From NCBI GenBank assembly GCA_002269645.1, contig NIVC01001622.1, forward strand, positions 116,984 to 180,983: DNA of 64,000 bases, read 5' to 3'. The DNA comes from Macrostomum lignano. Its lineage: Eukaryota. The notes beneath the pieces are model-generated. The model searched no databases, was not told the origin of the DNA, and saw only the letters and a program-made list of their open reading frames with translations. Positions within the stretch are counted from its first letter, which is position 1. Every line of letters starts with the position of its first letter. This document shows positions 3,245-60,935 of the stretch, piece by piece. The position numbers and the translations under genes were made by a program.

Positions 3245-3869
3245 CTGACTGACTGACTGACTGACTGACTGACTGACTGACTGACTGACTGACTGACTGA
3301 CTGACTGACTGACTGACTGACTGACTGACTGACTGACTGACTGACTGACTGACTGACTGACTGACTGACTGACTGACTGACTGACTGACTGACTGACTGA
3401 CTGACTGACTGACTGACTGACTGACTGACTGACTGACTGACTGACTGACTGACTGACTGACTGACTGACTGACTGACTGACTGACTGACTGACTGACTGA
3501 CTGACTGACTGACTGACTGACTGACTGACTGACTGACTGACTGACTGACTGACTGACTGACTGACTGACTGACTGACTGACTGACTGACTGACTGACTGA
3601 CTGACTGACTGACTGACTGACTGACTGACTGACTGACTGACTGACTGACTGACTGACTGACTGACTGACTGACTGACTGACTGACTGACTGACTGACTGA
3701 CTGACTGACTGACTGACTGACTGACTGACTGACTGACTGACTGACTGACTGACTGACTGACTGACTGACTGACTGACTGACTGACTGACTGACTGACTGA
3801 CTGACTGACTGACTGACTGACTGACTGACTGACTGACTGACTGACTGACTGACTGACTGACTGACTGAC
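3245..3869. repeat. (GACT)n microsatellite, ~155 units
   Basis: Perfect tetranucleotide run; explains the SVSQ ORF 3222..3932. Confidence 0.98.
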
Positions 3870-10084: not shown

Positions 10085-10387
10085 CTACAGAGTTGAGAAT
10101 CGGATTTCAAATAAAAGCAAAAATTCGCCAACTTTATACTACTACTGTTGCTGCTGTGTGCAGTAGTATTTTAGAGAAAGATAATCTAAATTTACTTGAA
10201 AAGCAACTTTGTTTTAATTGATTATTTCGAAGACTTGCTTGTCGAAATTAAGGATAATTAAAGAATTAAACCATGGTTTTGTTTATTCGCAACCTATGGC
10301 CATCATTTTATCGCTCGATAATTTCTCCTTGCAGACAAATAATCAAGCAGACAAGCTATAAGTGGCTATAAATCAATTTAAGCAAAC

Positions 10388-10976
10388 CTTCTCCAGCCAT
10401 GGCCGAATACAGTTGTGATGAAAGCAGTGCTGGCAGGGCAGCTGGTCAACATAGCAGCCTAGTAAAAATTCGTCGAAGCACACGGAGCACTGCAGCTTGT
10501 CCGACTGCTGCTGTTCAGTGACGGCCACTGACTGGATTCGGCGCATATCGTCAGGCGTAGCCGGAGGCGGCCCGCCGCCATCGAGCTGGTTCATCAGCTG
10601 CGTGACCACATTGTCCAGACTTTCAACGCCTAGTGCGTAATTGTCTAAATCGCCAACAATGCCAAACACCTGCTGGAACAGGCTCTGGATGAGCTGGTCC
10701 AACTCGCCCTGCCCAACTACACTGGCGCTTGCACCGCCCGAAGCACCGCCGCCGGTCGCTCCGCCGCCAGATCGGCTTAGTCGCAGTCTGTACACCTCGC
10801 TGCCGGCGCCAGCTGACGAGCTGGAAGCTCCGGCGGCACCGCTGTCAGAAACTTCGGTGCCCGCGCGGTCAGACGAGGCGCTAGAGAATAGTGAATAAGC
10901 GTAGGGATGATGACGCTGGTGATGATGCCGACCGCTCGAGGAGCCCGACGACTGGTCGAATACTAACGACGGGAAA
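10388..10976 (-). CDS. RNF115/RNF126: RNF115/RNF126-like RING-H2 E3 ligase, exon 3
   Basis: Encodes GDLDNYALGVESLDNVVTQLMNQLDGGGPPPA (the family DYAWG...LD.IITQL...GPPPA motif) and CSVCFDEF...LPCQHCFHHNCIRPWLEK. Acceptor ttgcttcag| (phase 2), donor AAG|gtttg (phase 0). Confidence 0.9.
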
Positions 10977-24698: not shown

Positions 24699-25407
24699 TC
24701 ATTGGTACGATTTGTCCTCCGGGGGAGAATAAGCTGGCGGCGGCGCCTGGATCACTGGGTAGCCGCTGAAACCGGCATCGGCAGGTGGAGCGGACGCTGG
24801 CACAGCAGGATCGTGTCCCATAGGCTGTCTAGGATAAGCAGCCGTAGGTAAATTAGTAGCGACAGCACTGCCTGGAACAGAAGCGTAGGGCACAGGCGGG
24901 CCGGCCATTTGCATCGGTGGATGCGCAACGGCGTTTGGCTGCGGCACGTTTCGATTGCGTTGATTCTGTCGCGAGATGTATAGGTAAATGCCGAAACCGG
25001 CCCCGCAGCAACAGCAACAGCACAGTATAATTGACACTAACAGGACTGCCAACACGGGCCCGAATACAGCAGCATCGCCGTGATATCTATAAAATTCCTC
25101 TTCATCGCAGCATCTCTGTTTCTCTTTACCGCAGCAATATTTAGAATCTTCATCATAATCCCATCCAATAGCGTCAGTGGGGCACACAAAATATGAGTAG
25201 TTTTTCCCAACGCTAGGCCTGGTGGACAAGTCTTTATTAACTGGCGCTTTGAAACTGGGGCTCTCGCAGACGGCGATGTCATCGTAGGTATTCAGATAGC
25301 TGTAGCCGTTCCCGTCACCGGTGGAGCTGAACTTGTGTCGCATGCGGCTGCCCACGTACACTGACCCAGCTAGGAACAGCCGCTCCTTCTTCAGCGTGGA
25401 CACGCCG
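24699..25407 (-). CDS. Shisa-like single-pass membrane protein, exon 3 (Cys-rich ectodomain, TM, Pro-rich tail with PPAY motif)
   Basis: C...FVCP...KYCCG...RCC, then hydrophobic VLAVLLVSIILCCCCCCGAGFGIYLYI, then a Pro-rich tail ending APPPAYSPP: the Shisa-like layout. Acceptor tttaacag| phase 2. Confidence 0.8.
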
Positions 25408-25480
25408 CTGTTAAACATTGAGGGAATTTGCCAATTGTTGGTTTATAATTTGAGTCTTCGCAGTCAGAGACCGTGGGGAG

Positions 25481-28545: not shown

Positions 28546-29302
28546 ATGATGTACATGTACATGTAGATGTAAAGATTTTCAGACTTTAACTCAAGGTGCC
28601 ATAGTCCAAGCTTTATCAAACCGCGATAACTTTTCCGTTTACCAAGCGTAAGATCAGATAACAAGAAAAACAAATTGAGACACCTCATTCTATCTCTCAT
28701 GCGGCAATTATGGCACTGTAGAGAAAATACTAACGATTGAATTATGAGATATTTAAATTAGAGTTAAATTGAATCTAAGATAAGCCAGTAAGTGGGCGCA
28801 GGGCCCAAACAAGTATATTTATATGACTTAATTTAGAGGGGGGTTGACTCCAGATAATAAGGAGAGGGGTGAAGTGCGCGACTGAAGAGAGAGGCGAGAA
28901 TGGAGAGCCAATCAGAAGGCAGCAAGGGAGAGAGAGATAAGAATAACAAGATTGAGCTAGACAGAGAGAGAGAAAACAGAGACAAGTGAAGGTGAACTAA
29001 GAAATGACTAGGAAAGTCGCGACAGGCACTAACACCTTTTTTACCTCCTATTTTGAACCAAAGTACGTCTTGTTCAAAAGAATTAAACAAGCAGAACTTC
29101 CACTTAAACACTTGAGAAATCTCAGCGCTTGTGGAAGTTTAACTCAAGCAAAGTCCATTTCTAATTGAAACAGATGAAATCCAATTCAGACTGTCTGTGG
29201 CCGAAACTGTCCCTGAGTGACGCGCACGCGCAGATTTGAAGTTCAAAAGAAAAAAAGTTTACAAACAAACAAACATTCTATTTCGACAGAGTTTTGCAGA
29301 TT

Positions 29303-31320
29303 AGATACGCATTTGTTTCCCGATCGATATTCAGATTGATATTCGAAAACTAACAAAATCTCTGCTCTGCAAAAATATTTTAGAACGCCGTTTGACAGGA
29401 AAAAAAGTGCAACTAAGAAAATTGCAAAAATTAAGTTTCAGCTCGATCCGTCACTCTGGCTCGAAATGGCACCGATTTTCGATGTGCTCCCATTTAAAAT
29501 ACATGTGATTTTATAAGGCAGATCGATATTCGAGTTCGCTCACTTTGGCTTGACCATTCAACATGAAATTTTACACACTAAAAAGTGCAACTCAGAAACC
29601 GATAAATATACAGTTTCAGCTCGATCCGTCACTCTGGCTCGAAATGGCACCGATTTTCGATGTGCTCCCATTTAAAATACATGTGATTTTATAAGGCAGA
29701 TCGATATTCGAGTTCGCTCACTTTGGCTTGACCATTCAACATGAAATTTTACACACTAAAAAGTGCAACTCAGAAACCGATAAATATACAGTTTCAGCTC
29801 GATCCGTCACTCTGACTCGAAATGGCACCGATTTTCGATGTGCTCCCATTTAAAATACATGTGATTTTATAAGGCAGATCGATATTCGAGTTCGCTCACT
29901 TTGGCTTGACCATTCAACATGAAATTTTACACACTAAAAAGTGCAACTCAGAAACCGATAAATATGCAGTTTCAGCTCGATCCGTCACTCTGGCTCGAAA
30001 TGGCACCGATTTTCGATGTGCTCCCATTTAAAATACATGTGATTTTATAAGGCAGATCGATATTCGAGTTCGCTCACTTTGGCTTGAGGCAATAAATAGA
30101 ATGTACTGCTTGCTTAGTATTGCTTAGGAAACACCATTCTTCGGGAAGCTGAATAAGATTTGCAACCCCTAATTAGATCCGCAACCTGCCTTCTGTGAGC
30201 TATATACGAGAGCTATAGATTTCGCGTTCCTCATTGTATATACTTTTCTGAATGCACCAACATCCGAACTTAACAATGTTCTGCCTCCTGCGTAAAATAA
30301 ATGAGCAAGATAAAAAAATGTTTGCTATCAAAATGGAACAAAACTTCGAGTCGAATGGTCAAGCCAAAGTGAGCGAACTCGAATATCGATCTGCCTTATA
30401 AAATCACATGTATTTTAAATGGGAGCACATCGAAAATCGGTGCCATTTCGAGCCAGAGTGACGGATCGAGCTGAAACTGCATATTTATCGGTTTCTGAGT
30501 TGCACTTTTTAGTGTGTAAAATTTCATGTTGAATGGTCAAGCCAAAGTGAGCGAACTCGAATATCGATCTGCCTTATAAAATCACATGTATTTTAAACGG
30601 GAGCACATCGAAAATCGGTGCCATTTCGAGCCAGAATGATGGATCGAGCTGAAACTGTATATTTATCGGTTTCTGAGTTGCACTTTTTAGTGTGTAAAAT
30701 TTCATGTTGAATGGTCAAGCCAAAGTGAGCGAACTCGAATATCGATCTGCCTTATAAAATCACATGTATTTTAAATAGGAGCACATCGAAAATCGGTGTC
30801 ATTTCGAGCCAGAATGACGGATCGAGCTGAAACTGTATATTTATCGGTTTCTGAGTTGCACTTTTTAGTGTGTAAAATTTCATGTTGAATGGTCAAGCCA
30901 AAGTGAGCGAACTCGAATATCGATCTGCCTTATAAAATCACATGTATTTTAAATAGGAGCACATCGAAAATCGGTGTCATTTCGAGCCAGAATGACGGAT
31001 CGAGCTGAAACTGTATATTTATCGGTTTCTGAGTTGCACTTTTTAGTGTGTAAAATTTCATGTTGAATGGTCAAGCCAAAGTGAGCGAACTCGAATATCG
31101 ATCTGCCTTATAAAATCACATGTATTTTAAATGGGAGCACATCGAAAATCGGTGCCATTTCGAGCCAGAGTGATGGATCAAGCTGAAACTTAATTTTTGC
31201 AATGTTCTTAGTTGCACTTTTTTTCCTGTCAAACGGCGTTCTAAAATATTTTTGCAGAGCAGAGATTTTGTTAGTTTTCGAATATCAATCTGAATATCGA
31301 TCGGGAAACAAATGCGTTCT
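29303..31320. mobile_element. Foldback-like element: ~0.8-1 kb inverted arms made of 178-bp tandem subrepeats around a ~265-bp spacer
   Basis: Outer ~130 bp unique and inverted (cgcatttgtttcccgatcg... / ...cgatcgggaaacaaatgcg). Left subrepeats start at 29436, 29614, 29792 and 29970 (~3.7 units). The right arm 30353-31189 is the reverse complement (~4.7 units). Confidence 0.85.
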
Positions 31321-32254: not shown

Positions 32255-33024
32255 TTTAGAATCTAACGCACATGTGATGTATCGACCAAATCCAATTCGA
32301 TGGCAAATTTCTTCAAAATCTCATTAAGCACTATATATGCTTTATGCCTCAAATAAAAGTAATAATTTCGTGGAAAATATTTTCTGCTTTTTACCAGTAA
32401 AAAAGAATTAATTCATTCCAGCAGCTGCTGATGCATGTATCCATATTATATTGTAGCCCTTGGCAGTTTCTGACGAATGGCATTGAGCATGAGGGGGCTC
32501 GCCTGCCCCTGCAGCATAGGACACATTCTTCCATTGAAAGCCAGGTCACGATATATGCATGCATATCCCAGGAGTTTAATGAATCAGCTTCATGATTGCA
32601 GATTCATGAATCGAAAATGAGATGTATAGATGATGTACATCATAGCTCAGTTCTGCAACACCCCCTACGGCGGGATACTGAGAATCAAGTAGATAAAGCC
32701 ATTTGTCTTACCATAATTTTAGAACATCAGCATGTGATTACGAGCGTAAAGTTTCTGTGTCGGAACAGTTTTTCATCCTGTCAGCAAACTATAAGCTTGT
32801 AAATTAAATAACAACACGAAAGTGGTGCATGTGTTGTAATTGCAGAAGCTCAATCTTATGTGCTTACTTCAATAAGTCCATTGGGTTGGGAAAAGATCTT
32901 TCCTCAATCAGGTGGTAAAATACATCCAATAATCAAATGTCCTTATTTTGTTAAAGACCCTTCAATTTTGTTGTTTTGACTATTAGTCAGATATACGCTC
33001 GTGTCTTTTTCCGAGCAGACCGGG

Positions 33025-33750
33025 CTACATCTCTCGCTTTCCGAGCAGACCAGAGTACATCTCTCGCTTTCCGAGCAGACCAGAGTACATCGCTCGCTTT
33101 CCGAGCAGACCAGAGTACATCTCTCGCTTTCCGAGCAGACCAGAGTACATCGCTCGCTTTCCGAGCAGACCAGAGTACATCTCTCGCTTTCCAAGCAGAC
33201 CAGAGTACATCGCTCGCTTTCCAAGCAGGCCAGAGTACATCTCTCGCTTTCCAAGCAGACCAGAGTACATCGCTCGCTTTCCAAGCAGGCCAGAGTACAT
33301 CTCTCGCTTTCCAAGAAGACCGGAGTACATCTCTCGCTTTCCAAGCAGGCCAGAGTACATCGCTCGCTTTCCAAGCAGGCCGGAGTACATCTCTCGCTTT
33401 CCAAGCAGGCCAGAGTACATCGCTCGCTTTCCAAGCAGGCCGGAGTACATCTCTCGCTTTCCAAGCAGGCCAGAGTACATCGCTCGCTTTCCAAGCAGAC
33501 CAGAGTACATCTCTCGCTTTCCAAGCAGACCAGAGTACATCTCTCGCTTTCCAAGCAGGCCAGAGTACATCGCTCGCTTTCCAAGCAGGCCGGAGTACAT
33601 CTCTCGCTTTCCAAGCAAACCAGAGTACATCACTCGCTTTCCAAGACCGCGCTCCAACACCCGCTTAGAGGCAAGAGCGCTCTCTAGTTGACCAAAATTG
33701 TCCAGCAGAACATAGACTACCAGCAGCAGAAGCAGTGGATACTTCATCAT
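33025..33750 (-). CDS. Prepro-neuropeptide encoding 20 x (E/A/V)MYSGLL-amide plus VLERGL-amide
   Basis: Signal peptide MMKYPLLLLLVVYVLLDNFGQLESA, KR site, then 30-bp repeats each ending G-K-R (amide donor Gly plus dibasic convertase site): 11 EMYSGLL, 8 AMYSGLL, 1 VMYSGLL. Other frames give no such logic. Confidence 0.93.
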   Translation of the reverse strand: MMKYPLLLLLVVYVLLDNFGQLESALASKRVLERGLGKRVMYSGLLGKREMYSGLLGKRAMYSGLLGKREMYSGLLGKREMYSGLLGKRAMYSGLLGKREMYSGLLGKRAMYSGLLGKREMYSGLLGKRAMYSGLLGKREMYSGLLGKREMYSGLLGKRAMYSGLLGKREMYSGLLGKRAMYSGLLGKREMYSGLLGKRAMYSGLLGKREMYSGLLGKRAMYSGLLGKREMYSGLLGKREM

Positions 33751-34444
33751 CTGATTTCTAGGAATGATTCTGTGCCAATCTAAAAAAATAATTGCTTGGT
33801 TTTTTGATCAAACTCAGAAAATGATGGACACAAACATTGACAAATAATCTTTTAAATTATTTAATGAAGTGTTGTTATAGTAAGGACATAGTTTAGGAGG
33901 TAATTCAAATTTGCTTTTGCGCTACTTTGAGTAGTTTTATTTCCAGAAATACCAGTAGATAGGTTAGTGAAGGCTTTGCGGGATGGGGGCACATGACGAA
34001 ACCTGACGAGAGCTGCCCATTTGCAACGTTTTTCCCAGATTTGAGAGAGAGTAAGCAAAATTTTAGAAATTTTAAGCATAAATTTTCTTAAACCGACAGT
34101 CAATCTGAAGAAATGTCCATAAAAATTCGAGCACATTTCCTGAGCCATCCCAAGTGAAGAGAAGTACTCTAGCATCACGGAATTTACATGCCTAGTCAGA
34201 CAGTATTAAGAGGACTCAAGATAAGAGTAATGACTGCCGCAACTTCAGCGGAAAATGTTTTCTAAGAAATACTCATCTGTCAGAATTTTATTTGCTAGGT
34301 AAACTAAACCTGCAGGGATCTGATTTTCTTGGTAAGCAAATAAATTGCGATTCGAAATATTTCCACTGACAAAATCAACACTGGTAGAGCCATTGAAATA
34401 GCTACTCAATCAGCGGGCTATTACGAGCGTAGATTGGGACAGGT

Positions 34445-35567: not shown

Positions 35568-36334
<767 letters not shown>

Positions 36335-36511
36335 CCTATGCAGAATTCCTAGACTTGAAAATCTCTCTACAAACTTGACTGAGCATTTTAGTCTATGTCA
36401 CAAAGGCTTTACGATTGAAAGCTGATGTTACTGGAGCTTATTCCGGTAAAGTCTGAATCTCGCATTAATTGTTAATTAAGAACGACCTCCTCTTTCAACA
36501 CGGACGCGGCA

Positions 36512-37193: not shown

Positions 37194-37877
37194 GTGAGGC
37201 CTTCGACGATGTGGGTCACTTCTGGTACGACCCGGGGGAATTGTATGGAGCCTCCTTGATCTTTTGTTTGGTATGGCAATTGTTTTAAGCATCCATGGCC
37301 TGTTTGAAATTTTCATTGTTAAACCCAATGATAGCTATATAGAATTCCTACGAGAAAATTTGATGCTGAAAACACCCAAAACTGGTTAAACCATTGGTCA
37401 AAAAAGGAATTTGTAAAATTCAAATGTTGTTTACAAGTGTTTCTAATGGTCTTTAAAAAAACTAACTTTGAAATCAGCAACCCCCCCCCTACAAAAACTG
37501 CAAAACAATTCTTGGTACTTGCCTAAAAATCATGAACTTACAGGTTACAGCAGTAGCAAGTGATGCTATTATAAGTAGTATCGTGCAAAAGAAAAACAAG
37601 GGGCAATTATAAATCTTTCTCGCAACCAAGAACGGCAGAGTTTTTGTGGAACTTTTTAATTAAACACCCATTATACTCATTTGGTTAGTGAAGAGAAAAG
37701 TCAGCAAACAATGAACAATTATCAATATTTATTATTGTTGATCAAGGGCGTCGCCACCGGAGGGTCCAGGGGGGCAGGTCTCCCCAGTAAAAGCTATGTG
37801 GGGACAGGCCAATGCTTTGTTCCCCCACTCAACCTTGTGACCCGTTATGGAAATTAATAATCTTGCTTCAGGGCGAC

Positions 37878-38497
37878 AAAATGAGTGCCTGCGGCGCTAA
37901 AATGAGTGCCTGCGGCGCCAAAATGAATGCCTGCGGCGCCAAAATGAGTGCCTGCGGCGCCAAAATGAGTGCCTGCGGCGCCAAAATGAGTGCCTGCGGC
38001 GCTAAAATGAGTGCCTGCGGCGCCAAAATGAGTGCCTGCGGCGCTAAAATGAGTGCCTGCGGCGCCAAAATGAGTGCCTGCGGCGTTAAAATGAGTGCCT
38101 GCGGCGCCAAAATGAGTGCCTGCGGCGCCAAAATGAGTGCCTGCGGCGCCAAAATAAGTGCCTGCGGCGCTAAAATGAGTGCCTGCGGCGCCAAAATGAG
38201 TGCCTGCGGCGCTAAAATGAGTGCCTGCGGCGCCAAAATGAGTGCCTGCGGCGCCAAAATGAGTGCCTGCGGCGCCAAAATAAGTGCCTGCGGCCTCAAA
38301 ATGAGTGCCTGTGGCCCCAAAATGAGTGCCTGCGGTGCCAAAATGAGTGCCTGTGGTACCAAAATGAGTGCCTGCGGTGCCAAAATGAGTGCCTGCGGCG
38401 CCAAAATGAGTGCCTGCGGCGCTAAAATGAGTGCCTGCGGCGCCAAAATGAGTGCCTGCGGCGCCAAAATGAGTGCCTGTGGTACCAAAATGAGTGC
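37878..38497. repeat. 21-bp minisatellite (aaaatgagtgcctgcggcgcc), ~29 units, intronic
   Basis: Explains the MSACGAK and PQALILA ORFs. Confidence 0.96.
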
Positions 38498-41979: not shown

Positions 41980-42518
<539 letters not shown>

Positions 42519-43124: not shown

Positions 43125-43811
<687 letters not shown>

Positions 43812-43845: not shown

Positions 43846-44823
43846 GTCGCCGCCGAGATCACTCGCTGGACAGACCAGGTTATGAGCAAGGCGCAGTGGC
43901 AGGCACTGAGCAGCGAGATGACCTCGCACCTGACTGTGTTTCTCCACCACGCCAGGCTTGAAATCATCAACTGCTACTCAATTATGATCTCATCACAATG
44001 CCTCCGCATGGAGTTCACCCCAACCAGCTTCAACTCGCAGAGCCTATTCGAGCTGCTGTGCGCTGCCAAGCAGCTGGACCTTACCAGCTTGTTCGTGTCT
44101 CTGCCGCTGGAGGCCAAGCCCAACTTTCTTGGCCTGCAGTCGCAGTCGCGTCACGTTTCCCAGGCGTCCTTGCTGTCGCAGGTTCCGCTTTCGTCCAGTC
44201 CTTGCTCCACCAAGTTCTTTAAAAAGAAATTCGACTCGCTGTGGGGCTACTTCAACTTCAGCGCCCCGGTCATTGAGAACTCGAAAATGTTTTACGGGGC
44301 CATCGCCAATGCCGATCTGGAGAGCAATATGAACGTAGCCAGGAAGGCCAAGGCCAAGCGTCAGAAACTGTGGACGGTGCTGAAAGGCGGCACGATGTAC
44401 ATGTTCAAGAAGCGGAGCGGCGCCTGTAATGCCGAGTACGAAATAGACTTGGAAAGCTTATCGGAACTGGACGTGACTGAGGACACGGTGGGCGCCGGTA
44501 AGAAGGACCTTCTGGCTGGTGCCATAGCGATGACCGGAGGCGCGGCCAAAACTCTCGTGCTGCGCTTCTCAAACTCAAAGAAGTGCGTCTACCTGACACC
44601 GCTCGATCGGTTCGACTTCAAACGCTGGGAGGAGGCGCTCAACGCTGTGCTGCGCGGCGAGCGACGCCTCGAACAGCGCACGCTGGAGTGCATGAGCAAG
44701 CTCCAAGCCAGGCGCATTTCCGGCCTGAGCAACTCCTTTCACAACCTGTCCTCGGCGAATGACAGCAGACAGGAGTCGCCAACGACTTTCAGGCGAAACG
44801 ACGGCAAGCTCGGGCTTACGATA
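43846..44823 (+). CDS. PH-domain protein, large exon containing the PH domain
   Basis: ctgaag|VAAEITRW... KLWTVLKGGTMYMFK...EIDLESL...VYLTPLDRFDFKRWEEALNAVL has the PH pattern, including the invariant helix Trp. Donor ATA|gtaagt. Confidence 0.82.
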
Positions 44824-45298
44824 GTAAGTGAACCCCCCCCCCCGAACACACTGGGGAACGGCTATTCCTGACGGGTCTCCTCCGGTCCACTCAGTCTCCA
44901 TTCGCTTTGGCTTATTGCTCTTTCCATGCTCAGGGACACGCTGGGGCAACTCCCAGGAGAGCTCGCATCAAAGAAAAGCATAAAAATCCTGTTTAATTAT
45001 TTCTAATCATTCGATGTTTCTCCGCAAAATCTTTTAAGCTAGGCGCGCGACTTGCCCGGACAAAATAAACCACAAAGCAATGTGGCAACGACCAGTGAAC
45101 CTAAGAAGCCTGGCTTTAATTTATTAGTACAAGTCATTAGCCTAGGCATTCTGCACGAAGCTCTGCACAAAACACCAGAACTATGACCGACTTCGTACCG
45201 TTACAGGACGTATTAAAATCGTATAATAAGCTCGCATAGGCGTCTGCATTATTTACCAATCGTGTGCTGAATTTCAAACGCTTTCATTTACTTTTCAG

Positions 45299-45471: not shown

Positions 45472-45518
45472 GTAAGACAATGGGACTGTGGTTTCTTGAA
45501 TCGCTGTAAGCGTTACAT

Positions 45519-45845
45519 GAGGATGCTTCTCCACATTGCTTGTGGATGTCAGTAAATGAGGATGCTTCTCCACATCGCTTGTGGATGTCAGTAAATGAGG
45601 ATGCTTCTCCACATCGCTTGTGGATGTCAGTAAATGAGGATGCTTCTCCACATCGCTTGTGGATGTCAGTAAATGAGGATGTTTCTCCACATCGCTTGTG
45701 GATGTCAGTAAGTGAGGATGCTTCTCCACATCGCTTGTGGATGTCAGTAAGTGAGGTTGCTTCTCCACATCGCTTGTGGATGTCAGTAAGTGAGGATGCT
45801 TCTCCACATCGCTTGTGGATGTCAGTAAGTGAGGTTGCTTCTCCA
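45519..45845. repeat. 39-bp minisatellite, ~8 units, intronic
   Basis: gaggatgcttctccacatcgcttgtggatgtcagtaaat repeats. Confidence 0.95.
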
Positions 45846-46343
45846 AGACACTGTCTCCTTATGAGGCCTCTAGCGTGATAGTGTTCGATAGCGTTCTGGA
45901 ACACCTACCAGAAGGACATATAGCAGGAAGTTATTTTATCCAGCGAATGCTCACGTTTCACTAATCCAGACACGAAATAATCGAAATTTCGGTAAACTGA
46001 GCCTTGCTAACATCGATTTCAGACGCAGACGATCGATTTTAAGTCTTCTAGCTTCTAAATGAATGAAAAAGCCGAGAGAAACTCTATGAGAAGCGCTTGA
46101 TCGATCAGTTCGTGAAGCTGAAATATCTCTGCAAAAGGTGTACTGCAAAACTACTTTAATATAATAATGTGGGATTGAAATTTGCACGTATTATTTACAT
46201 AGGAATGTTTTCTAGCTTAGCTAAGCACCCTGTGCAAACGCGAAATGAGCTAGATGTACTTTTCAGACTCTTAGGTACACTTATTCAATGCTTATGGAAT
46301 TCCCGCTTCCTATGCTCTATTCCAATATTCCTGAGGAAGGTGC

Positions 46344-47121
46344 TGTCACATTCCTATATTCCTGAAGAGAGTCCTATGTCACATTCCTATATTCCTGAAG
46401 AGAGTCCTATGTCACATTCCTATATTCCTGAAGAGAGTCCTATGTCACATTCCTATATTCCTGAAGAGAGTCCTATGTCACATTCCTATATTCCTGAAGA
46501 GAGTCCTATGTCACATTCCTATTCCTATATTCCTGAAGCAGGTCCTATATGTCACATTCCTATTCCTATATTCCTGAAGCAGGTCCTATATGTCACATTC
46601 CTATTCCTATATTCCTGAAGCGGGTCCTATATGTCACATTCCTATATTCCTGAAGCGGGTCCTATGTCACATTCCTATATTCCTGAAGAGAGTCCTATGT
46701 CACATTCCTATATTCCTGAAGAAGGTCCTATATGTCACATTCCTATATTCCTGAAGCGGGTCCTATATGTCACATTCCTATATTCCTGAAGAGAGTCCTA
46801 TGTCACATTCCTATATTCCTGAAGCAGGTCCTATATGTCACATTCCTATATTCCTGAAGCGGGTCCTATATGTCACATTCCTATATTCCTGAAGCGGGTC
46901 CTATGTCACATTCCTATATTCCTGAAGATAGTCCTATGTCACATTCCTATATTCCTGAAGCGGGTCCTATGTCACATTCCTATATTCCTGAAGCGGGTCC
47001 TATGTCACATTCCTATATTCCTGAAGCAGGTCCTATGTCACATTCCTAGATATTCCTGAAGCGGGTCTTATGCTCTATTCCTATATTCCTGAAGCGGGTC
47101 CTATGTCACTTTCTATATTCC
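46344..47121. repeat. 33-bp minisatellite with 35/39-bp variants, intronic
   Basis: gtcacattcctatattcctgaagagagtcctat repeats. Confidence 0.95.
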
Positions 47122-47264
47122 AGAAACAAATTTGAAGTTTCCTTTAACAGCCTTACCTTGAGTTAATATTAATTTAGTAAATTTCCTTTCCTGTGCATCA
47201 TGTTTCATGTGGATGCATGCTTTCACAGGTAATTTTTGAAAATAAATCTGTTTGTCTTCTACAG

Positions 47265-53123: not shown

Positions 53124-54039
53124 ATGAAATCTCTTCAGGCTCTCACAGTGCTGCTTCTATTCAACTCGTGCAACGAGGTGTTAGCAACTGAAACTATGAG
53201 CGACACTGGGAGCCCTTTGATGCTGTCACAAGCCGGTTGGTACGCCTGCCTGCTCTACAATGACAGTCGCGGTCTCAACTGTGACATCTTTGCCAGCGAT
53301 GTTGCAAATGCTATTAGGCTTCTCCCGCCACTGCCCCGGACCATCTCCAGTCTGGCACTGGTGCTTCAGCCAGCGACAGACGAGCCTGCAGCTGACCAAC
53401 TGTTGCCAGTCGACACCTTGGTGCGGTATGGTCCAATCGAATCATTATTCGTGAGAAGCCACAGACGTCGCCCATTTGGCGTGGCCGAATGCGGTCTAAG
53501 TCCACTTGCGGCCAGTCTGCGTTCTCTAGAATTCATCGGCTTCTGTGGAATTATTGGCAGTGAACTAGCCAGCAATGATCCATTCTGTGATGCGCAGATT
53601 AATCTGACCAGTTTGAAACTGAGCTTGACTCCAGGCAGCGCCAGCTGCTGGGGATGCTATTCGCCTGCCACAATCATGGATCGAAATTCATTCAGCCTGA
53701 AGGAACTGCACCTTAGCTTGCCATCCGACTGCAGTCTGGCTAGGTTACAGGTGGAAAATATGCCTCGACTGGAGAGGCTGTCCTTGCGCACGACTTCTCT
53801 GACAGGAGACGCCAATGAAGCAAACAGTGACAGCAACTCCATAAATAGTCAAAGAGAGCTGCGCTATGAAGAAGAGAGCCTGTCTGGCATGCGGTTTCGC
53901 AATTTGCCTAACCTTCGGTCTCTGTTTCTGACACTCTATCACAAGATGGTCAAGTGTGACAATGGCAGCGTGTTCGAATCGGAGTCATTCGTGAATCTCA
54001 CCAGCCTGGAGTCAATCAACATTGGCAACATGCTTGTAT
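53124..54039 (+). CDS. Secreted leucine-rich-repeat protein, exon 1
   Basis: Signal peptide MKSLQALTVLLLFNSCNEVLA; degenerate LRRs (MPRLERLSLRT, LPNLRSLFLTL, LTSLESINIGN). Donor GTA T|gtgagt phase 1. Confidence 0.82.
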
Positions 54040-54614
54040 GTGAGTAAACTCGTACCAAATTTTCTGTAACAGTGAATGAGAATAGTTAATGAAAACAAAA
54101 CAACATCAGCCCCGTTCAAAGTTGGGCCATAGACGATTCCACTGTCTGACTTTCATATCCGTTCCCCCTATCCAGAGCTGCCGATTCAAATGCATTTTAT
54201 TGGAATTTGAGCTTAGAATTTCACCATCCTCTCTCTTAATGATCGCAGTATTGATTTGGTCAGCCAAGTTGATAGTTAAGCTAACAAGGTTCCATCTTCA
54301 CTGCATAGAAGTCGATGTTTAAGCATGATTTATATGAGAGAGGCTGCTGCTGGCATCCTTCTTTGTGCTGATGCCCAAGGTCGAATTCTCAACTTACAGT
54401 GTACTCGTCTTTTTTCCACATTCACATCTGAGATGATAGGCAGTGAAGTAGACGAGATAATCAGATAATTTGGTGAAATAGAATTTCTATGATATATTTT
54501 ATTCGAGACCGGGTGAATGATGCGAAATTGGGCCAACCTGGTAACTTTTGGTAGAGTATTTTAGCTTTCTAGACGTAATTCTTCACTCGTGTATCCATTT
54601 TTGCGTTTCCGCAG

Positions 54615-56734
54615 CTGTCGGGGCCTCGCTAATCTCGGCCAGCAACAAACAAAACTGGTGCGAGCTGCTGGCACCGGGAGCCTTTCAAGCCGGCTCTGAA
54701 GCAATCCGGCATGTCAGTCTTGGCGCCGGCTTCATGATGCCGCTCAGCATCAACCTGCGGAGTAACCCGGATCTGCTGCGCTGCCGCAACTGCTCCGAAC
54801 AAAGACTAGTGATTGGCGAGTCCCCCTGGATGACGTCATTGTTTTTTACGAACCCGAAGCGCTGCCAGCTGCTGCTGCCAGTAGATCAAGCGCTAAATGT
54901 TACACATTTACGCGTCGGCAAGTGTACGTTTGGCCCTATAAATTCCAGCCTTCTTAGTTTATGGCCGCGTCTTCGCTCAATTGTTATGGACAACACTGAC
55001 AGCAATGATGGGCCCAAGGATGACATCAGAGAATGGAATTCATTCCGAGCCGGTCGCGGTTCAGTTGGTGAAAATCATTTTCTCGTGACGCAGCTGAACT
55101 TAGACGACTTCATTCACTATGCCGGAACCAATGCGAAGCTTCAACAGGTGACACTGACCGCTCGGGAGTGCTTGTGTTCGGCTGGCAATTTCAGCGATAA
55201 CTTGCCGAGGCAAATACCAGAATCGCAGGCGATACTAGTCTCTATTGGCTGCGCCAACCTCAATTCTGCAGATCCGTTTACTTCTCTGGCTTCGGCGCTG
55301 GAAGGTTGCCGCGAGTTTGCCGTTTTTCCAATCAGCATTCGACAGTTTCTCGCCGCCCAAGAAGGCCAATGTGTCAGCTTCAACACAAGCGTTTCATGTG
55401 TTTTAACGAGCAGTTTCTTTGTCAGCTCTCTGCCTTTGCCATATCCGGTAGATCGCTTTGATTGCCTGATGAGGATAGTAGTCCCGACTTTATCGCATCT
55501 TTTTCTGGCAAAAGCGCAAAATCTGCGCACCTTAGTATTTTCTGGGTCACACTACTCCAGCTTTCGGACTGTGGGGCTTTGCGACATCGAGGACGGCGCC
55601 TTTGAGGCATTGCATAACTTGGAAACACTCGTGTTGCGCAATAACCTTCTCAGCAAGATTAATGCGCACACATTCACGGGACTTAGCCGGCTTCGACTGC
55701 TCGACTTGTCCACTAACTTCCACCTTAAGACAATTGCTGCCGAAGCATTTAAGCCAGTGGCAACAACAGTACAATTCCTTCGAATGACAGTGCGCCAACC
55801 AGATGACCTACCAAAATGTATCAGCCAGTCTAATCTGACGCATCTTGAAAGCTTTAACATTGAATTTTCTTTTAGCCTTGATGAGCCCAACCTCGAGACA
55901 AAGCTGCTGCATATCGACCTACCAGAGGGTAGCGTTGCTAATCTGCCGTTACTGCGCAAGCTCGCCATTTCACTGCACGACTACTGGCTGCCTCGGCGGG
56001 TCCTGCTGCGCCGTCACAGCATTGCACACCTGCCTAGTCTGCGAAGCCTGTCTATTCACGCAAACCACCGAGACTCGACCATAACTATGGAACCAGAAGC
56101 CCTTTATCGCTTGGCTCAAGGCCACGATGGTTTAGGGCTTCGGTACCTGTCTCTGCTGTCGCTGAAGCCTCCCGTGCCAGTTTCTATTTGGCGCGAACTT
56201 CTGTCTGGATCCGTGAGCGGCGGTCAAGAAGCAATTATAAACTTTGCAGCCGCGCCAACAGAGTTCATTTTTCACAACTTGGCGTCTTCTGCTAATCTGA
56301 GCTTTAACGCTAGCCGCTTGACTTTAAGCGTGAGTAGAGGCTGTAATCTACTGACTCGGCGAGATCTGGGTGACCTGGGACGCCTGTTTCCAAGGCTCCG
56401 TCGGCTCAGCTTGCAGTCATTCTTGGCCATCAATTTAGGAGATGATGAAAACCTTCTCACTGACTTGAGGTCAGCTGCAATCTTCTTGACGCGACTCGAT
56501 GCGGTGCCGAACAACTGCACAGCGCTTTCCACAGTCATTAGGCCGCGATTTCTAGATGGCGTTAACTTCAACGAATCTCTTGTTGGACCCCGACTCAAGC
56601 TAAGACTTAGCTGCCCGAAAACGGGCGGAGAATGCAACTTTTACAATTTTGCCTCTATGCCGATCCAAGGTGCTAAAAGTTTGCAGCCTTTGATAGCCAT
56701 TTCTGCACTTGTTTGGATGGTTAGTTTCTTTTAG
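54615..56734 (+). CDS. Secreted leucine-rich-repeat protein, exon 2 (hydrophobic C-terminus, possible GPI signal)
   Basis: Acceptor ttttgcgtttccgcag| phase 1. Typical extracellular LRRs (LHNLETLVLRNNLLSKINAHTFTGLSRLRLLDLSTN). Ends LQPLIAISALVWMVSFF*. Spliced length 1011 aa. Confidence 0.85.
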
Positions 56735-60570: not shown

Positions 60571-60935
60571 GGTGCCGTAGCCCAGTGGTCCAACGCGGCG
60601 CTTGATGTACCAGCGGCCCAGGCTCGATTCCAAGTGCAGTCACATTAATTTGGGCTGAATTGGAATCTCGGCTTGGCTCTGCTCGTGCAATTAACGGCCT
60701 TGAGGCCAACCCCCAAGGCGCAGTGAAGTGTACATGCCTAACGATAAATAAAGTTAGGGCCGCTGTACACTCCTGTGTGAGTGTGTGCCTGTGCGTGCGT
60801 ACGTATCCGCGCGCTTGTGTGCCTGCTCAGGGGAGTCGGCGGAATGGGCAGTAATGCCTCTCGCCGGTTGTGTGACAGTGTGGCGCTTAAAGTGTCCCAG
60901 GGTGCACATGGCCCCTGCCTCTAATAAAAATGCAT
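60571..60935 (+). mobile_element. tRNA-derived SINE (family 2)
   Basis: A box tagcccagtgg (60578-60588), B box ggctcgattcc (60621-60631), body similar to 23095-23395, ending near aataaaaa. Confidence 0.55.

What the first reader, a model, noticed from the sequence alone, without database searches (positions are those of the whole stretch)
33025..33750. Multi-copy MYSGLL-amide neuropeptide precursor hidden in an apparent 30-bp minisatellite
Seen: a signal peptide, then KR-VLERGL-GKR and 20 spacer-less 10-aa units (11 EMYSGLL, 8 AMYSGLL, 1 VMYSGLL), each followed by GKR. DNA differences among units are synonymous or confined to residue 1, which argues for selection on this frame. Established: G-K-R means prohormone convertase cleavage plus PAM amidation, and multi-copy precursors of this layout are typical invertebrate neuropeptides. 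Inference: it yields about 20 short amidated peptides, and N-terminal Glu could cyclise to pGlu. I do not recognise xMYSGLLamide as a named family. The closest remembered resemblance is allatostatin-A/buccalin-type (...GL-amide), but these peptides end GLL-amide. It may be an undescribed peptide signalling system, and repeat masking would likely hide it from annotation.
Basis: partly seen in the sequence, partly recalled or inferred. Interest (0 to 1): 0.88.

Follow-up and report, generated by a model that had tools for sequence, protein, structure and literature searches.

The report
Flatworm multi-copy MYSGLL-amide peptide precursor gene
The apparent 30-bp minisatellite is very probably a real gene of a Macrostomum-type flatworm that encodes about 20 copies of a short amidated signalling peptide; this peptide type already occurs in flatworms, so it is a new family member rather than a new signalling system.

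Summary
On the minus strand, 33750..33025 is a 241-codon ORF. It encodes a hydrophobic signal peptide, KR, VLERGL-GKR, then 20 spacer-less xMYSGLL-GKR units (11 E, 8 A, 1 V). A decayed 21st unit carries the stop.

It is more than a chance open frame:
- It is the only G-[KR]-[KR] cluster in any of the six frames of the 64 kb window.
- Five of seven unit variants are synonymous in this frame (P=0.011), against three or fewer in the other five frames.
- An exhaustive protein search found Macrostomum lignano PAA49395.1, a signal peptide followed by 16 D/A-MYSGLL-GKR units. Only the peptide array is conserved between the two loci.

A second M. lignano gene encodes AG[Y/F]RGLL-GKR. The planarian prohormone Smed-spp-13 yields FRGLLamide, which was detected by mass spectrometry (Collins 2010 supplement).

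The gene is therefore a member of a flatworm [F/Y]xGLLamide peptide family. It is not allatostatin-A/buccalin, and it is not EFLamide, because M. lignano has a separate EFLamide-type gene.

The window shares a SINE-like element (90% identity) with M. lignano, so it comes from that species or a close relative.

Expression, processing and the receptor remain untested. Novelty: new member of a known kind. Interest is moderate to low.

The parts
33025..33750 (-). Complete coding sequence of the prepropeptide (241 aa plus TAG stop), apparently a single coding exon
   Evidence: ORF listing and translation. It is the only G[KR][KR] cluster in the six frames of the window.
33670..33750 (-). Signal peptide, aa 1 to about 20-27 (MMKYPLLLLLVVYVLLDNFG / QLESALA). 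Cleavage after G20 or after the A-L-A motif at A27 is inferred by eye and not predicted with SignalP.
   Evidence: The hydrophobic core has a 10-residue Kyte-Doolittle mean of 3.41. That is higher than in the M. lignano and planarian homologues (2.2-2.7) and in the control array ORFs (0.4-1.9).
33634..33666 (-). First dibasic site (KR, aa 29-30), followed by a single divergent peptide, VLERGL-GKR, predicted to give VLERGLamide
   Evidence: Translation. The position matches SIFSGVL-GKR in M. lignano PAA49395.1.
33034..33633 (-). Array of 20 in-frame 30-bp units encoding xMYSGLL-GKR (1 V, 11 E, 8 A). E and A largely alternate, giving a 60-bp higher-order repeat.
   Evidence: Unit-by-unit table, TRF, variant classification, 86-90% DNA identity to the M. 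lignano array.
33004..33033 (-). Decayed 21st unit (EM*PGLLGKR) that carries the stop codon at 33027..33025
   Evidence: The terminal unit has TAC->TAG and TCT->CCC.
33780..33790 (-). Polypyrimidine tract plus AG (tattttttta-g) about 30 nt upstream of the ATG. It may be a cis- or trans-splice acceptor in front of the coding exon. This is inference only.
   Evidence: Sequence read. No transcript data are available.

Best explanation
This is a genuine peptide-prohormone gene of a macrostomid flatworm (Macrostomum lignano or a close relative).

Proposed mechanism (inferred):
1. The 241-aa product enters the secretory pathway through its signal peptide.
2. A PC2-type prohormone convertase cuts after each Lys-Arg.
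3. A carboxypeptidase trims the two basic residues.
4. Peptidylglycine alpha-amidating monooxygenase converts the exposed Gly into a C-terminal amide.

Predicted products are one VLERGLamide, 11 EMYSGLLamide, 8 AMYSGLLamide and 1 VMYSGLLamide. These most likely act as neuropeptides or peptide hormones on an unidentified receptor.

The gene belongs to a flatworm family of [F/Y]-x-G-L-L-amide peptides. Other members are M. lignano PAA49395.1 (the same MYSGLL peptide), M. lignano PAA58165.1 (AG[Y/F]RGLLamide) and planarian Smed-spp-13 (FRGLLamide). The coding array also behaves as a minisatellite: copy number and synonymous variants change by unequal exchange, while selection keeps the peptide constant.

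What is shown: the anatomy, the frame-specific constraint and the homologues. What is inferred: processing, amidation, neuronal expression and receptor signalling.
For: Anatomy: signal peptide, KR, and 21 peptide-GKR modules in one ORF.

Uniqueness: this is the only G[KR][KR] cluster in the six frames of the window.

Frame-specific constraint:
- Five of seven variants are synonymous in this frame (hypergeometric P=0.011). The other five frames have three or fewer, and one of them gains a stop.
- Pooling this array with the M. lignano array, residues 2-10 show 9 synonymous against 2 non-synonymous steps (binomial P=2.5e-4). The two non-synonymous steps are one M->V and one R->K at the cleavage site.

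Homologues:
- An exhaustive phmmer search of 1.84 billion representatives found P0006, which is M. lignano PAA49395.1. It has a signal peptide, SIFSGVL-GKR, and then D/A-MYSGLL-GK[KR] units.
- Its locus L001 has 16 such units, 86-90% identical in DNA to the window array. The flanks, signal peptide and propeptide are not alignable, so only the peptide-coding part is conserved.
- A second M. lignano gene, P0012/PAA58165.1, has the same single-exon layout. It uses the same 30-bp register, encodes AG[Y/F]RGLL-GKR, and is 73% identical in DNA to the window array.

Processing in flatworms:
- Smed-spp-13 (KK-FRGLL-GKR) yields FRGLLamide, detected by mass spectrometry (PMC2953531 supplementary files 4 and 6).
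- M. lignano has a nervous-system-expressed PC2 homologue (PMC4490696).

Taxon: a non-coding, tRNA-derived SINE-like element at window 60571-60927 is 90% identical to M. lignano contig NIVC01003891. A second dispersed repeat is 81% identical.
Against: There is no transcript, peptide or expression evidence for this locus.

No gene with exactly this product is on record.

SignalP and NeuroPred were not available, so the signal peptide was judged by hydrophobicity only.

The selection test on the window alone is modest (P=0.011, seven variants).

The three arrays use almost identical codons for GLLGKR (GGN CTG CTY GGA AAG CGA). Their similarity may therefore partly reflect recent duplication or gene conversion rather than long-term constraint.

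Orthology versus paralogy to PAA49395.1 is unresolved, because the flanks do not align.

The nearest canonical polyadenylation hexamers lie 447 nt (ATTAAA) and 800 nt (AATAAA) downstream of the stop.

The stop codon sits inside a decayed repeat unit.
Confidence: 0.8

Rival explanations
1. It is a non-coding minisatellite whose open frame, N-terminal hydrophobic stretch and GKR motif arose by chance.
For: The window is extremely rich in tandem repeats. Four of the six frames of this array are open, and other period-3n arrays also give ORFs of 130-250 aa. No product is on record.
Against: The synonymous excess is specific to this frame. This is the only G[KR][KR] cluster in the window. An ATG, a signal peptide, KR and an extra amidated peptide lie in frame directly upstream. 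An independent locus in M. lignano has a different signal peptide in front of the same peptide array.
Confidence: 0.03
2. It is a silent or recently inactivated paralogue (pseudogene) of the functional MYSGLLamide gene represented by M. lignano PAA49395.1. It is intact only because it is young.
For: There is no expression evidence. The stop lies inside a decayed terminal unit. The spacer and C-terminal tail seen in the M. lignano gene are missing. No nearby AATAAA was found. Array codon usage is nearly identical to the M. lignano arrays, which is compatible with a recent copy or gene conversion.
Against: The 600 bp of highly mutable array contain no indel, frameshift or internal stop. The array has its own distinct signal peptide and its own first peptide in frame. 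Its variants are biased towards synonymous changes.
Confidence: 0.1
3. It is a real secreted multi-copy amidated peptide precursor, but it is not neuronal. It could be a gland, reproductive, pheromone-like or defensive peptide.
For: Nothing in the sequence specifies the cell type. Multi-copy dibasic-processed precursors also occur for non-neuronal secreted peptides (general knowledge).
Against: The layout matches the neuropeptide precursors that dominate the homology search: EFLamide, allatostatin-A, myomodulin and MIP types. The related planarian FRGLLamide was catalogued among prohormone-derived peptides.
Confidence: 0.08
4. The peptides are the flatworm orthologues of a named bilaterian family: arthropod xMGSEFLamide (EFLamide/TRH-type), mollusc LASGLV/Iamide, or allatostatin-A/buccalin.
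For: EFLamide: AMGSEFL-GKR and AMYSGLL-GKR share 7 of 10 positions. Arthropod EFLamide precursors are the most numerous strong hits and have the same layout of one N-terminal copy plus a spacer-less array. LASGLV/Iamide: the mollusc peptides (MMDPLASGLVamide, YxxxSLASGLIamide x11) share S-G-L plus an aliphatic amide.
Against: M. lignano already has a separate, clear EFLamide-type precursor: P0061, with RAVSEFL-GKR and RPVSEYL-GKR x7. The C-terminus here is GLL-amide, not EFL-amide, FGL-amide or GL-amide. E-values in the repeat searches scale with copy number and with GKR periodicity, not with relatedness. The LASGLVamide resemblance rests on three residues.
Confidence: 0.12

Closest known systems
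Macrostomum lignano hypothetical protein BOX15_Mlig004832g1 (PAA49395.1; P0006; locus L001 on NIVC01003891.1)
   Same: Both have a signal peptide, one divergent first peptide ending in GKR, and then a spacer-less 30-bp array encoding x-MYSGLL-GK[KR]. AMYSGLL-GKR units are identical, and array DNA is 86-90% identical.
   Different: It has 16 units rather than 20. Residue 1 is D/A rather than E/A/V. About 45 aa of acidic spacer precede its array, and it has a C-terminal tail (SGSFASSKENNIRD). Signal peptide, propeptide and flanks are not alignable with the window. The deposited model is 'partial' because of a 1-bp deletion in one unit. It is unnamed and uncharacterised.
Macrostomum lignano PAA58165.1 (P0012; locus L002)
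   Same: It has the same single-exon layout, the same 30-bp unit and the same GLL-GKR C-terminus with an aromatic residue at position -5. Codons for GLLGKR are identical, and array DNA is 73% identical.
   Different: Its peptides are AG[Y/F]RGLLamide, with Gly-aromatic-Arg in place of Met-Tyr-Ser.
Schmidtea mediterranea secreted peptide prohormone 13 (Smed-spp-13), FRGLLamide (Collins et al. 2010, PMC2953531, supplement)
   Same: It is a flatworm prohormone in which F-R-G-L-L-GKR is cut at dibasic sites and amidated. The amide was detected by mass spectrometry. It has the same GLLamide end and an aromatic residue at -5.
   Different: The known partial sequence shows only two copies. The peptide is a pentapeptide with Arg at -4. 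It is closer to PAA58165.1 than to the MYSGLL branch. Its function and receptor are unknown, and it is listed as a 'miscellaneous amidated peptide'.
Arthropod GSEFLamide / EFLamide precursors (e.g. Eriocheir sinensis P0001, mis-named 'ribosome-binding protein 1-like')
   Same: These are heptapeptide amides such as A-M-G-S-E-F-L-NH2. The layout is one N-terminal copy followed by many spacer-less x-GKR units. Seven of ten unit positions are shared.
   Different: The C-terminal pharmacophore is EFLamide rather than GLLamide. Macrostomum has its own EFLamide-type gene, P0061, so this is resemblance and not orthology.
Mollusc LASGLVamide / LASGLIamide family
   Same: It is a spiralian family of multi-copy peptides ending in S-G-L plus an aliphatic amide.
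   Different: It has A rather than Y before SGL and ends in V/I rather than L. Its peptides are longer. Precursors were not compared, and its receptor is unknown.
Allatostatin-A / buccalin
   Same: These are multi-copy amidated peptides with Tyr, Gly and Leu near the C-terminus. AstA-type precursors appear among the repeat-driven hits.
   Different: The defining Y/FxFGLamide or GGLamide ending is absent. The peptides here end in GLLamide.

Membership tests
Multi-copy amidated peptide prohormone (generic kind) | N-terminal signal peptide | tested here: met
   The sequence MMKYPLLLLLVVYVLL has a 10-residue Kyte-Doolittle mean of 3.41. Control array ORFs score 0.4-1.9. SignalP was not available.
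Multi-copy amidated peptide prohormone (generic kind) | Every peptide copy is flanked by dibasic cleavage sites and ends in a Gly amide donor | tested here: met
   All 21 modules end in G-K-R. This is the only such cluster in the six frames of the window.
Multi-copy amidated peptide prohormone (generic kind) | Purifying selection on the peptide frame, and conservation of the peptide elsewhere | tested here: met
   Five of seven variants are synonymous (P=0.011). With the M. lignano array the count is 9 synonymous to 2 non-synonymous (P=2.5e-4). The identical AMYSGLL-GKR occurs in M. lignano.
Multi-copy amidated peptide prohormone (generic kind) | Transcribed in neurons or secretory cells, with mature amidated peptides present | not testable with these tools
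   No transcriptome or peptidome of the source organism is available here.
Flatworm [F/Y]xGLLamide peptides (Smed-spp-13 FRGLLamide; M. lignano PAA58165.1) | C-terminal G-L-L followed by G-K-R, predicting GLLamide | tested here: met
   All 20 units end in GLLGKR. The same ending occurs in P0012 and spp-13.
Flatworm [F/Y]xGLLamide peptides (Smed-spp-13 FRGLLamide; M. lignano PAA58165.1) | Aromatic residue five positions from the C-terminus | tested here: met
   Tyr here, Y/F in P0012, F in spp-13.
Flatworm [F/Y]xGLLamide peptides (Smed-spp-13 FRGLLamide; M. lignano PAA58165.1) | Arg at position -4 (the RGLLamide core) | tested here: not met
   The residue is Ser here (YSGLL), so this is a distinct branch of the family.
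Flatworm [F/Y]xGLLamide peptides (Smed-spp-13 FRGLLamide; M. lignano PAA58165.1) | Homology of the precursor or array beyond the short motif | tested here: met
   The window array aligns with the P0012 array over about 340 bp at 73% identity, in the same 30-bp register. Both share the single-exon layout and the GLLGKR codons. No comparison with the spp-13 DNA was possible.
Allatostatin-A / buccalin | C-terminal Y/FxFGLamide (AstA) or ...GGLamide (buccalin) | tested here: not met
   The peptides end in SGLLamide. The AstA-type precursors found in the search carry PYSFGL-GKR.
EFLamide / GSEFLamide (TRH-type) | C-terminal (S)E[F/Y]Lamide, and being the lineage's EFLamide gene | tested here: not met
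   The ending here is GLLamide. M. lignano has a separate precursor with RAVSEFL-GKR and RPVSEYL-GKR x7 (P0061).
Mollusc LASGLV/Iamide | C-terminal (L)ASGL[V/I]amide | tested here: inconclusive
   S-G-L plus an aliphatic amide is shared, but Y replaces A and L replaces V/I. Precursor sequences were not compared.
Neutral non-coding minisatellite | Unit variants show no bias with respect to any reading frame | tested here: not met
   The bias is specific to the peptide frame.

The most novel reading that the evidence does not exclude
MYSGLLamide, the RGLLamides of Macrostomum and planarians, and possibly the mollusc LASGLV/Iamides together form one spiralian 'SGL/GLL-amide' peptide family whose receptor has never been identified. 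Under this reading, the Macrostomum genes, with 16-20 identical copies, would be the best entry point for deorphanising a new peptide-GPCR pair.
Probability: 0.25. Interest if true: 0.5.

Novelty: new member of a known kind. Interest (0 to 1): 0.35.

Why it matters
It adds a clean, high-copy member to a barely characterised flatworm peptide family with no known function or receptor. That gives Macrostomum researchers concrete peptides to synthesise, look for and knock down. The sequences are EMYSGLLamide, AMYSGLLamide and VLERGLamide, with predicted masses.

It also illustrates an annotation problem. Spacer-less neuropeptide arrays look like minisatellites. Here the gene is absent from the protein collections, and its M. 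lignano relative is truncated by an indel in the array and labelled 'hypothetical'. A crab EFLamide precursor found in the same search is mislabelled 'ribosome-binding protein 1-like'.

It is not a new kind of signalling system.

Tried and rejected
1. Word-indexed protein search with the precursor. It returned only a crab EFLamide precursor and an annelid DLamide-like protein. It missed the M. lignano homologue that the exhaustive search later found, so its negatives are weak.
2. One search with five window ORFs concatenated, to identify the organism. Nothing passed: the list hit its 8,000-candidate limit and none of them scored.
3. Search with the RNF126-like RING exon. The only hit was a 63%-identical fragment from the Logan assemblies of public sequencing runs, which says nothing about the taxon.
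4. Exact look-ups of the precursor and nine other window ORFs or ORF variants. None is on record, so the species could not be fixed this way.
5. Rfam at gathering thresholds and ARAGORN on the window. Both found nothing.
6. A search for the M. lignano spliced-leader sequence, recalled from memory. No match, which is uninformative.
7. A metagenome scan for two tandem x4-GLLGKR units. It gave four loci, all chance matches in unrelated or bacterial contigs.
8. The Pfam hit 'ITAM' (E=5.6e-27) on the precursor. Rejected as an artefact of the repeated YxxL motif; no single stretch passes.
9. Literature strings MYSGLL, YSGLL, SGLLamide, GLLGKR and FRGLL. There were no neuropeptide hits in main texts. 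'GLLamide' appears only as a synthetic control peptide in a coral study.
10. McVeigh et al. 2009 and 2011, which catalogue flatworm neuropeptides and include M. lignano ESTs, are not held. Koziol et al. 2016 was seen only as a reference without a PMC id and was not read. A prior description of this peptide there cannot be excluded.
11. Alignment of the flanks and pre-array region with the M. lignano locus. No similarity was found.

Full report
**1. The observation**

The region 33025-33750 holds a 241-codon ORF on the minus strand, with the ATG at 33750 and the TAG stop at 33027-33025. Translated codon by codon, it begins MMKYPLLLLLVVYVLLDNFGQLESALAS-KR-VLERGL-GKR.

Twenty exact 30-bp units follow at 33633-33034, each encoding x-MYSGLL-GKR. 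Residue 1 is V once, E eleven times and A eight times.

A 21st unit at 33033-33004 is decayed (EM*PGLLGKR) and supplies the stop. Tandem Repeats Finder sees the array at 33008-33645: period 30, 21.3 copies, 93% matches, no indels. E and A units largely alternate, which gives a 60-bp higher-order repeat. The Leu-7 codon changes from CTT to CTC towards the 3' end of the array. Both are typical of minisatellite dynamics.

**2. Is it more than chance?**

An open frame alone proves nothing here. The window carries dozens of mini- and microsatellites. Four of the six frames of this array are open. Other arrays whose period is a multiple of three (21, 33 and 39 bp) also produce ORFs of 130-250 aa.

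Three things set this frame apart:
- It is the only place in any of the six frames of the 64 kb window with a cluster of G-[KR]-[KR] sites.
- It is the only array ORF that starts with a strongly hydrophobic, signal-peptide-like N-terminus. Its 10-residue Kyte-Doolittle mean is 3.41. The three control array ORFs score 0.4-1.9, and the homologous flatworm precursors score 2.2-2.7.
- Of the seven distinct substitutions among the 20 units, five are synonymous in this frame. The other two both fall on residue 1. Only 23 of the 90 possible substitutions are synonymous, giving a hypergeometric P of 0.011. In the other five frames at most three of the seven are synonymous, and one frame acquires a stop.

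**3. Relatives**

The word-indexed protein search returned only a crab precursor with AMGSEFL-GKR repeats and an annelid DLamide-like protein.

The exhaustive phmmer scan of 1.84 billion representatives was decisive. Most strong hits are repeat-driven matches to other GKR-periodic neuropeptide precursors: arthropod EFLamide, allatostatin-A, myomodulin and MIP types. But P0006 carries a signal peptide, SIFSGVL-GKR, and then D/A-MYSGLL-GK[KR] units.

P0006 is Macrostomum lignano PAA49395.1, annotated as a 'hypothetical protein, partial'. Its genomic locus, L001, has 16 units. One unit has a 1-bp deletion that truncates the deposited model. Without that deletion the ORF would end in SGSFASSKENNIRD.

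The two arrays are 86-90% identical in DNA. Upstream DNA, signal peptide, propeptide and downstream DNA show no detectable similarity. Pooling the two arrays, residues 2-10 have undergone 9 synonymous steps against 2 non-synonymous ones, a single M->V and an R->K at the cleavage site (binomial P=2.5e-4). Conservation is thus confined to the peptide-coding units and to this reading frame.

A second M. lignano gene, P0012 (PAA58165.1, locus L002), has the same single-exon layout. It consists of a signal peptide, a short propeptide, a few divergent copies, and then a 30-bp array encoding AG[Y/F]RGLL-GKR. Its array is 73% identical to the window array and uses the same codons for GLLGKR.

**4. Which organism?**

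Direct identification failed. Rfam, tRNA scans, exact-sequence look-ups and the remaining protein searches gave nothing.

However, window 60571-60927 is a non-coding element with a tRNA-like end, probably a SINE. It is 90% identical to L001 2951-3303 of M. lignano. Another dispersed repeat (window 28839-29019) is 81% identical to an intronic segment of L002. Together with the near-identical peptide array, this places the window in Macrostomum lignano or a close relative.

Because the flanks do not align with L001, the window gene is either a paralogue within that genome or a diverged orthologue in a congener. I could not decide between these.

**5. How it most likely works**

By established prohormone biochemistry, processing would run as follows. 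The signal peptide is removed. A PC2-type convertase cuts after each KR. A carboxypeptidase removes the K and R. PAM converts the terminal Gly into an amide.

The predicted products are 11 EMYSGLLamide, 8 AMYSGLLamide, 1 VMYSGLLamide and 1 VLERGLamide. A two-residue remnant (EM) is left at the C-terminus.

This route is documented in flatworms for this very ending. The planarian prohormone Smed-spp-13 (…KK-FRGLL-GKR-VHA-KR-FRGLLG…) yields FRGLLamide, which was detected by mass spectrometry and listed under 'miscellaneous amidated peptides' (Collins et al. 2010, PMC2953531, supplementary files 4-6). M. lignano has a PC2 homologue expressed in the nervous system, and its knock-down is lethal to hatchlings (Arbore et al. 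2015, PMC4490696).

Neuronal expression of this particular gene, amidation, possible pyroglutamate formation from N-terminal Glu, and the receptor are all inferences.

**6. Comparison with known families**

The best-supported assignment is a flatworm [F/Y]-x-G-L-L-amide family with two branches. One is RGLLamide (planarian spp-13 and M. lignano PAA58165.1). The other is MYSGLLamide (M. lignano PAA49395.1 and this locus).

The arthropod xMGSEFLamide (EFLamide, TRH-type) family resembles this one strikingly in unit sequence (7 of 10 positions) and in precursor layout. But M. lignano has its own EFLamide-type precursor, P0061 (UniRef A0A1I8IPR6), with RAVSEFL-GKR and RPVSEYL-GKR x7. MYSGLLamide is therefore not the EFLamide orthologue.

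Mollusc LASGLV/Iamides (MMDPLASGLVamide, YxxxSLASGLIamide x11) share S-G-L plus an aliphatic amide. That is a lead, not a demonstrated relationship.

**7. Novelty and caveats**

The strings MYSGLL, YSGLL, SGLLamide, GLLGKR and FRGLL do not occur in a neuropeptide context in the searchable full texts. FRGLLamide is found only in the Collins supplement. The catalogues most likely to list an M. lignano peptide of this kind could not be consulted. McVeigh et al. 2009 and 2011 are not held. Koziol et al. 2016 was seen only as a reference without a PMC id and was not read. A prior naming there cannot be excluded.

The gene is a new, apparently unannotated member of a known but barely studied flatworm peptide family. 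It is not a new kind of system. The near-identical codon usage of all three arrays suggests fairly recent common ancestry or gene conversion, which tempers the 'deep conservation' argument. The frame-specific synonymous bias and the independent signal peptides still argue strongly for function.

**8. Verdict**

Confidence that this is a real, functional secreted peptide precursor is about 0.8. The main rival is an unexpressed young paralogue, at about 0.1. Interest is moderate to low (0.35).

Noticed in passing
L001 6571-6600 (M. lignano NIVC01003891.1): The deposited M. lignano gene model PAA49395.1 is 'partial' because one repeat unit has a 1-bp deletion (GGAAGCGA instead of GGAAAGCGA). Five more peptide units and a C-terminal tail lie beyond it. 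The cause is probably an assembly error in a homopolymer, or else a real frameshift.
   Followed up: partly
P0061 (UniRef A0A1I8IPR6, M. lignano), not in the window: The N-terminal 180 aa form a clear EFLamide-type precursor: signal peptide, RAVSEFL-GKR, and RPVSEYL-GKR x7. The remaining 550 aa or so look like a fused or mis-predicted gene model.
   Followed up: partly
P0001 (Eriocheir sinensis), not in the window: A crab AMGSEFLamide (EFLamide) precursor is named 'ribosome-binding protein 1-like isoform X2' in NCBI. This is an annotation error caused by its repetitiveness.
   Followed up: no
window 60571-60927: A non-coding element with a tRNA-like end (SINE-like), 90% identical to M. lignano contig NIVC01003891. 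It is the best clue to the source organism. ARAGORN finds no intact tRNA.
   Followed up: partly
window 10373-10795 (-): An exon-like ORF encoding an RNF126/RNF115-type RING-H2 domain, with the GPPPA motif and CSVCFDEF...LPCQHCFHHNCIRPWLE (Pfam zf-RING_2).
   Followed up: partly
window 53124-54047 and 54548-56734 (+): Two long ORFs (307 and 728 aa). They carry an N-terminal signal-like sequence, LRR_8 repeats and a C-terminal hydrophobic tail. They are probably two exons of one leucine-rich-repeat surface protein.
   Followed up: partly
window 24699-25418 (-) and 43882-44871 (+): The first is a 239-aa ORF with a Cys-rich ectodomain, a CCCCCC-containing transmembrane segment and a Pro-rich PPxY tail. 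It has a shisa-like look but no Pfam hit. The second is a 329-aa ORF with a weak PH-domain match.
   Followed up: partly
window 37872-38497, 45517-45845, 46319-47125: Other tandem arrays with periods of 21, 39 and 33 bp give long ORFs, for example (KMSACGA)n open on both strands. They have no signal peptide or dibasic sites. They served as negative controls for the rule that an open frame in a minisatellite is not evidence of a gene.
   Followed up: yes
window 29402-30087 and 30353-31222: A 178-bp satellite occurs in two blocks of 3.9 and 4.9 copies. Their consensus units are reverse complements of each other, so they form a large inverted arrangement about 2 kb downstream of the peptide gene.
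   Followed up: no
window 3245-3869, 35568-36339, 41980-42508, 43125-43811: Exceptionally long and nearly perfect tetranucleotide arrays: (CTGA)156, (CTAT)193, (TCTA)132 and (AGTT)172.
   Followed up: no
window 33025-33750 (-), Pfam scan: Pfam reports ITAM (PF02189) at E=5.6e-27 for the precursor, with no single stretch passing. This is a false positive created by 20 repeats of YSGL (the YxxL motif). The same 'faint' ITAM flag sits on the M. lignano homologue.
   Followed up: yes
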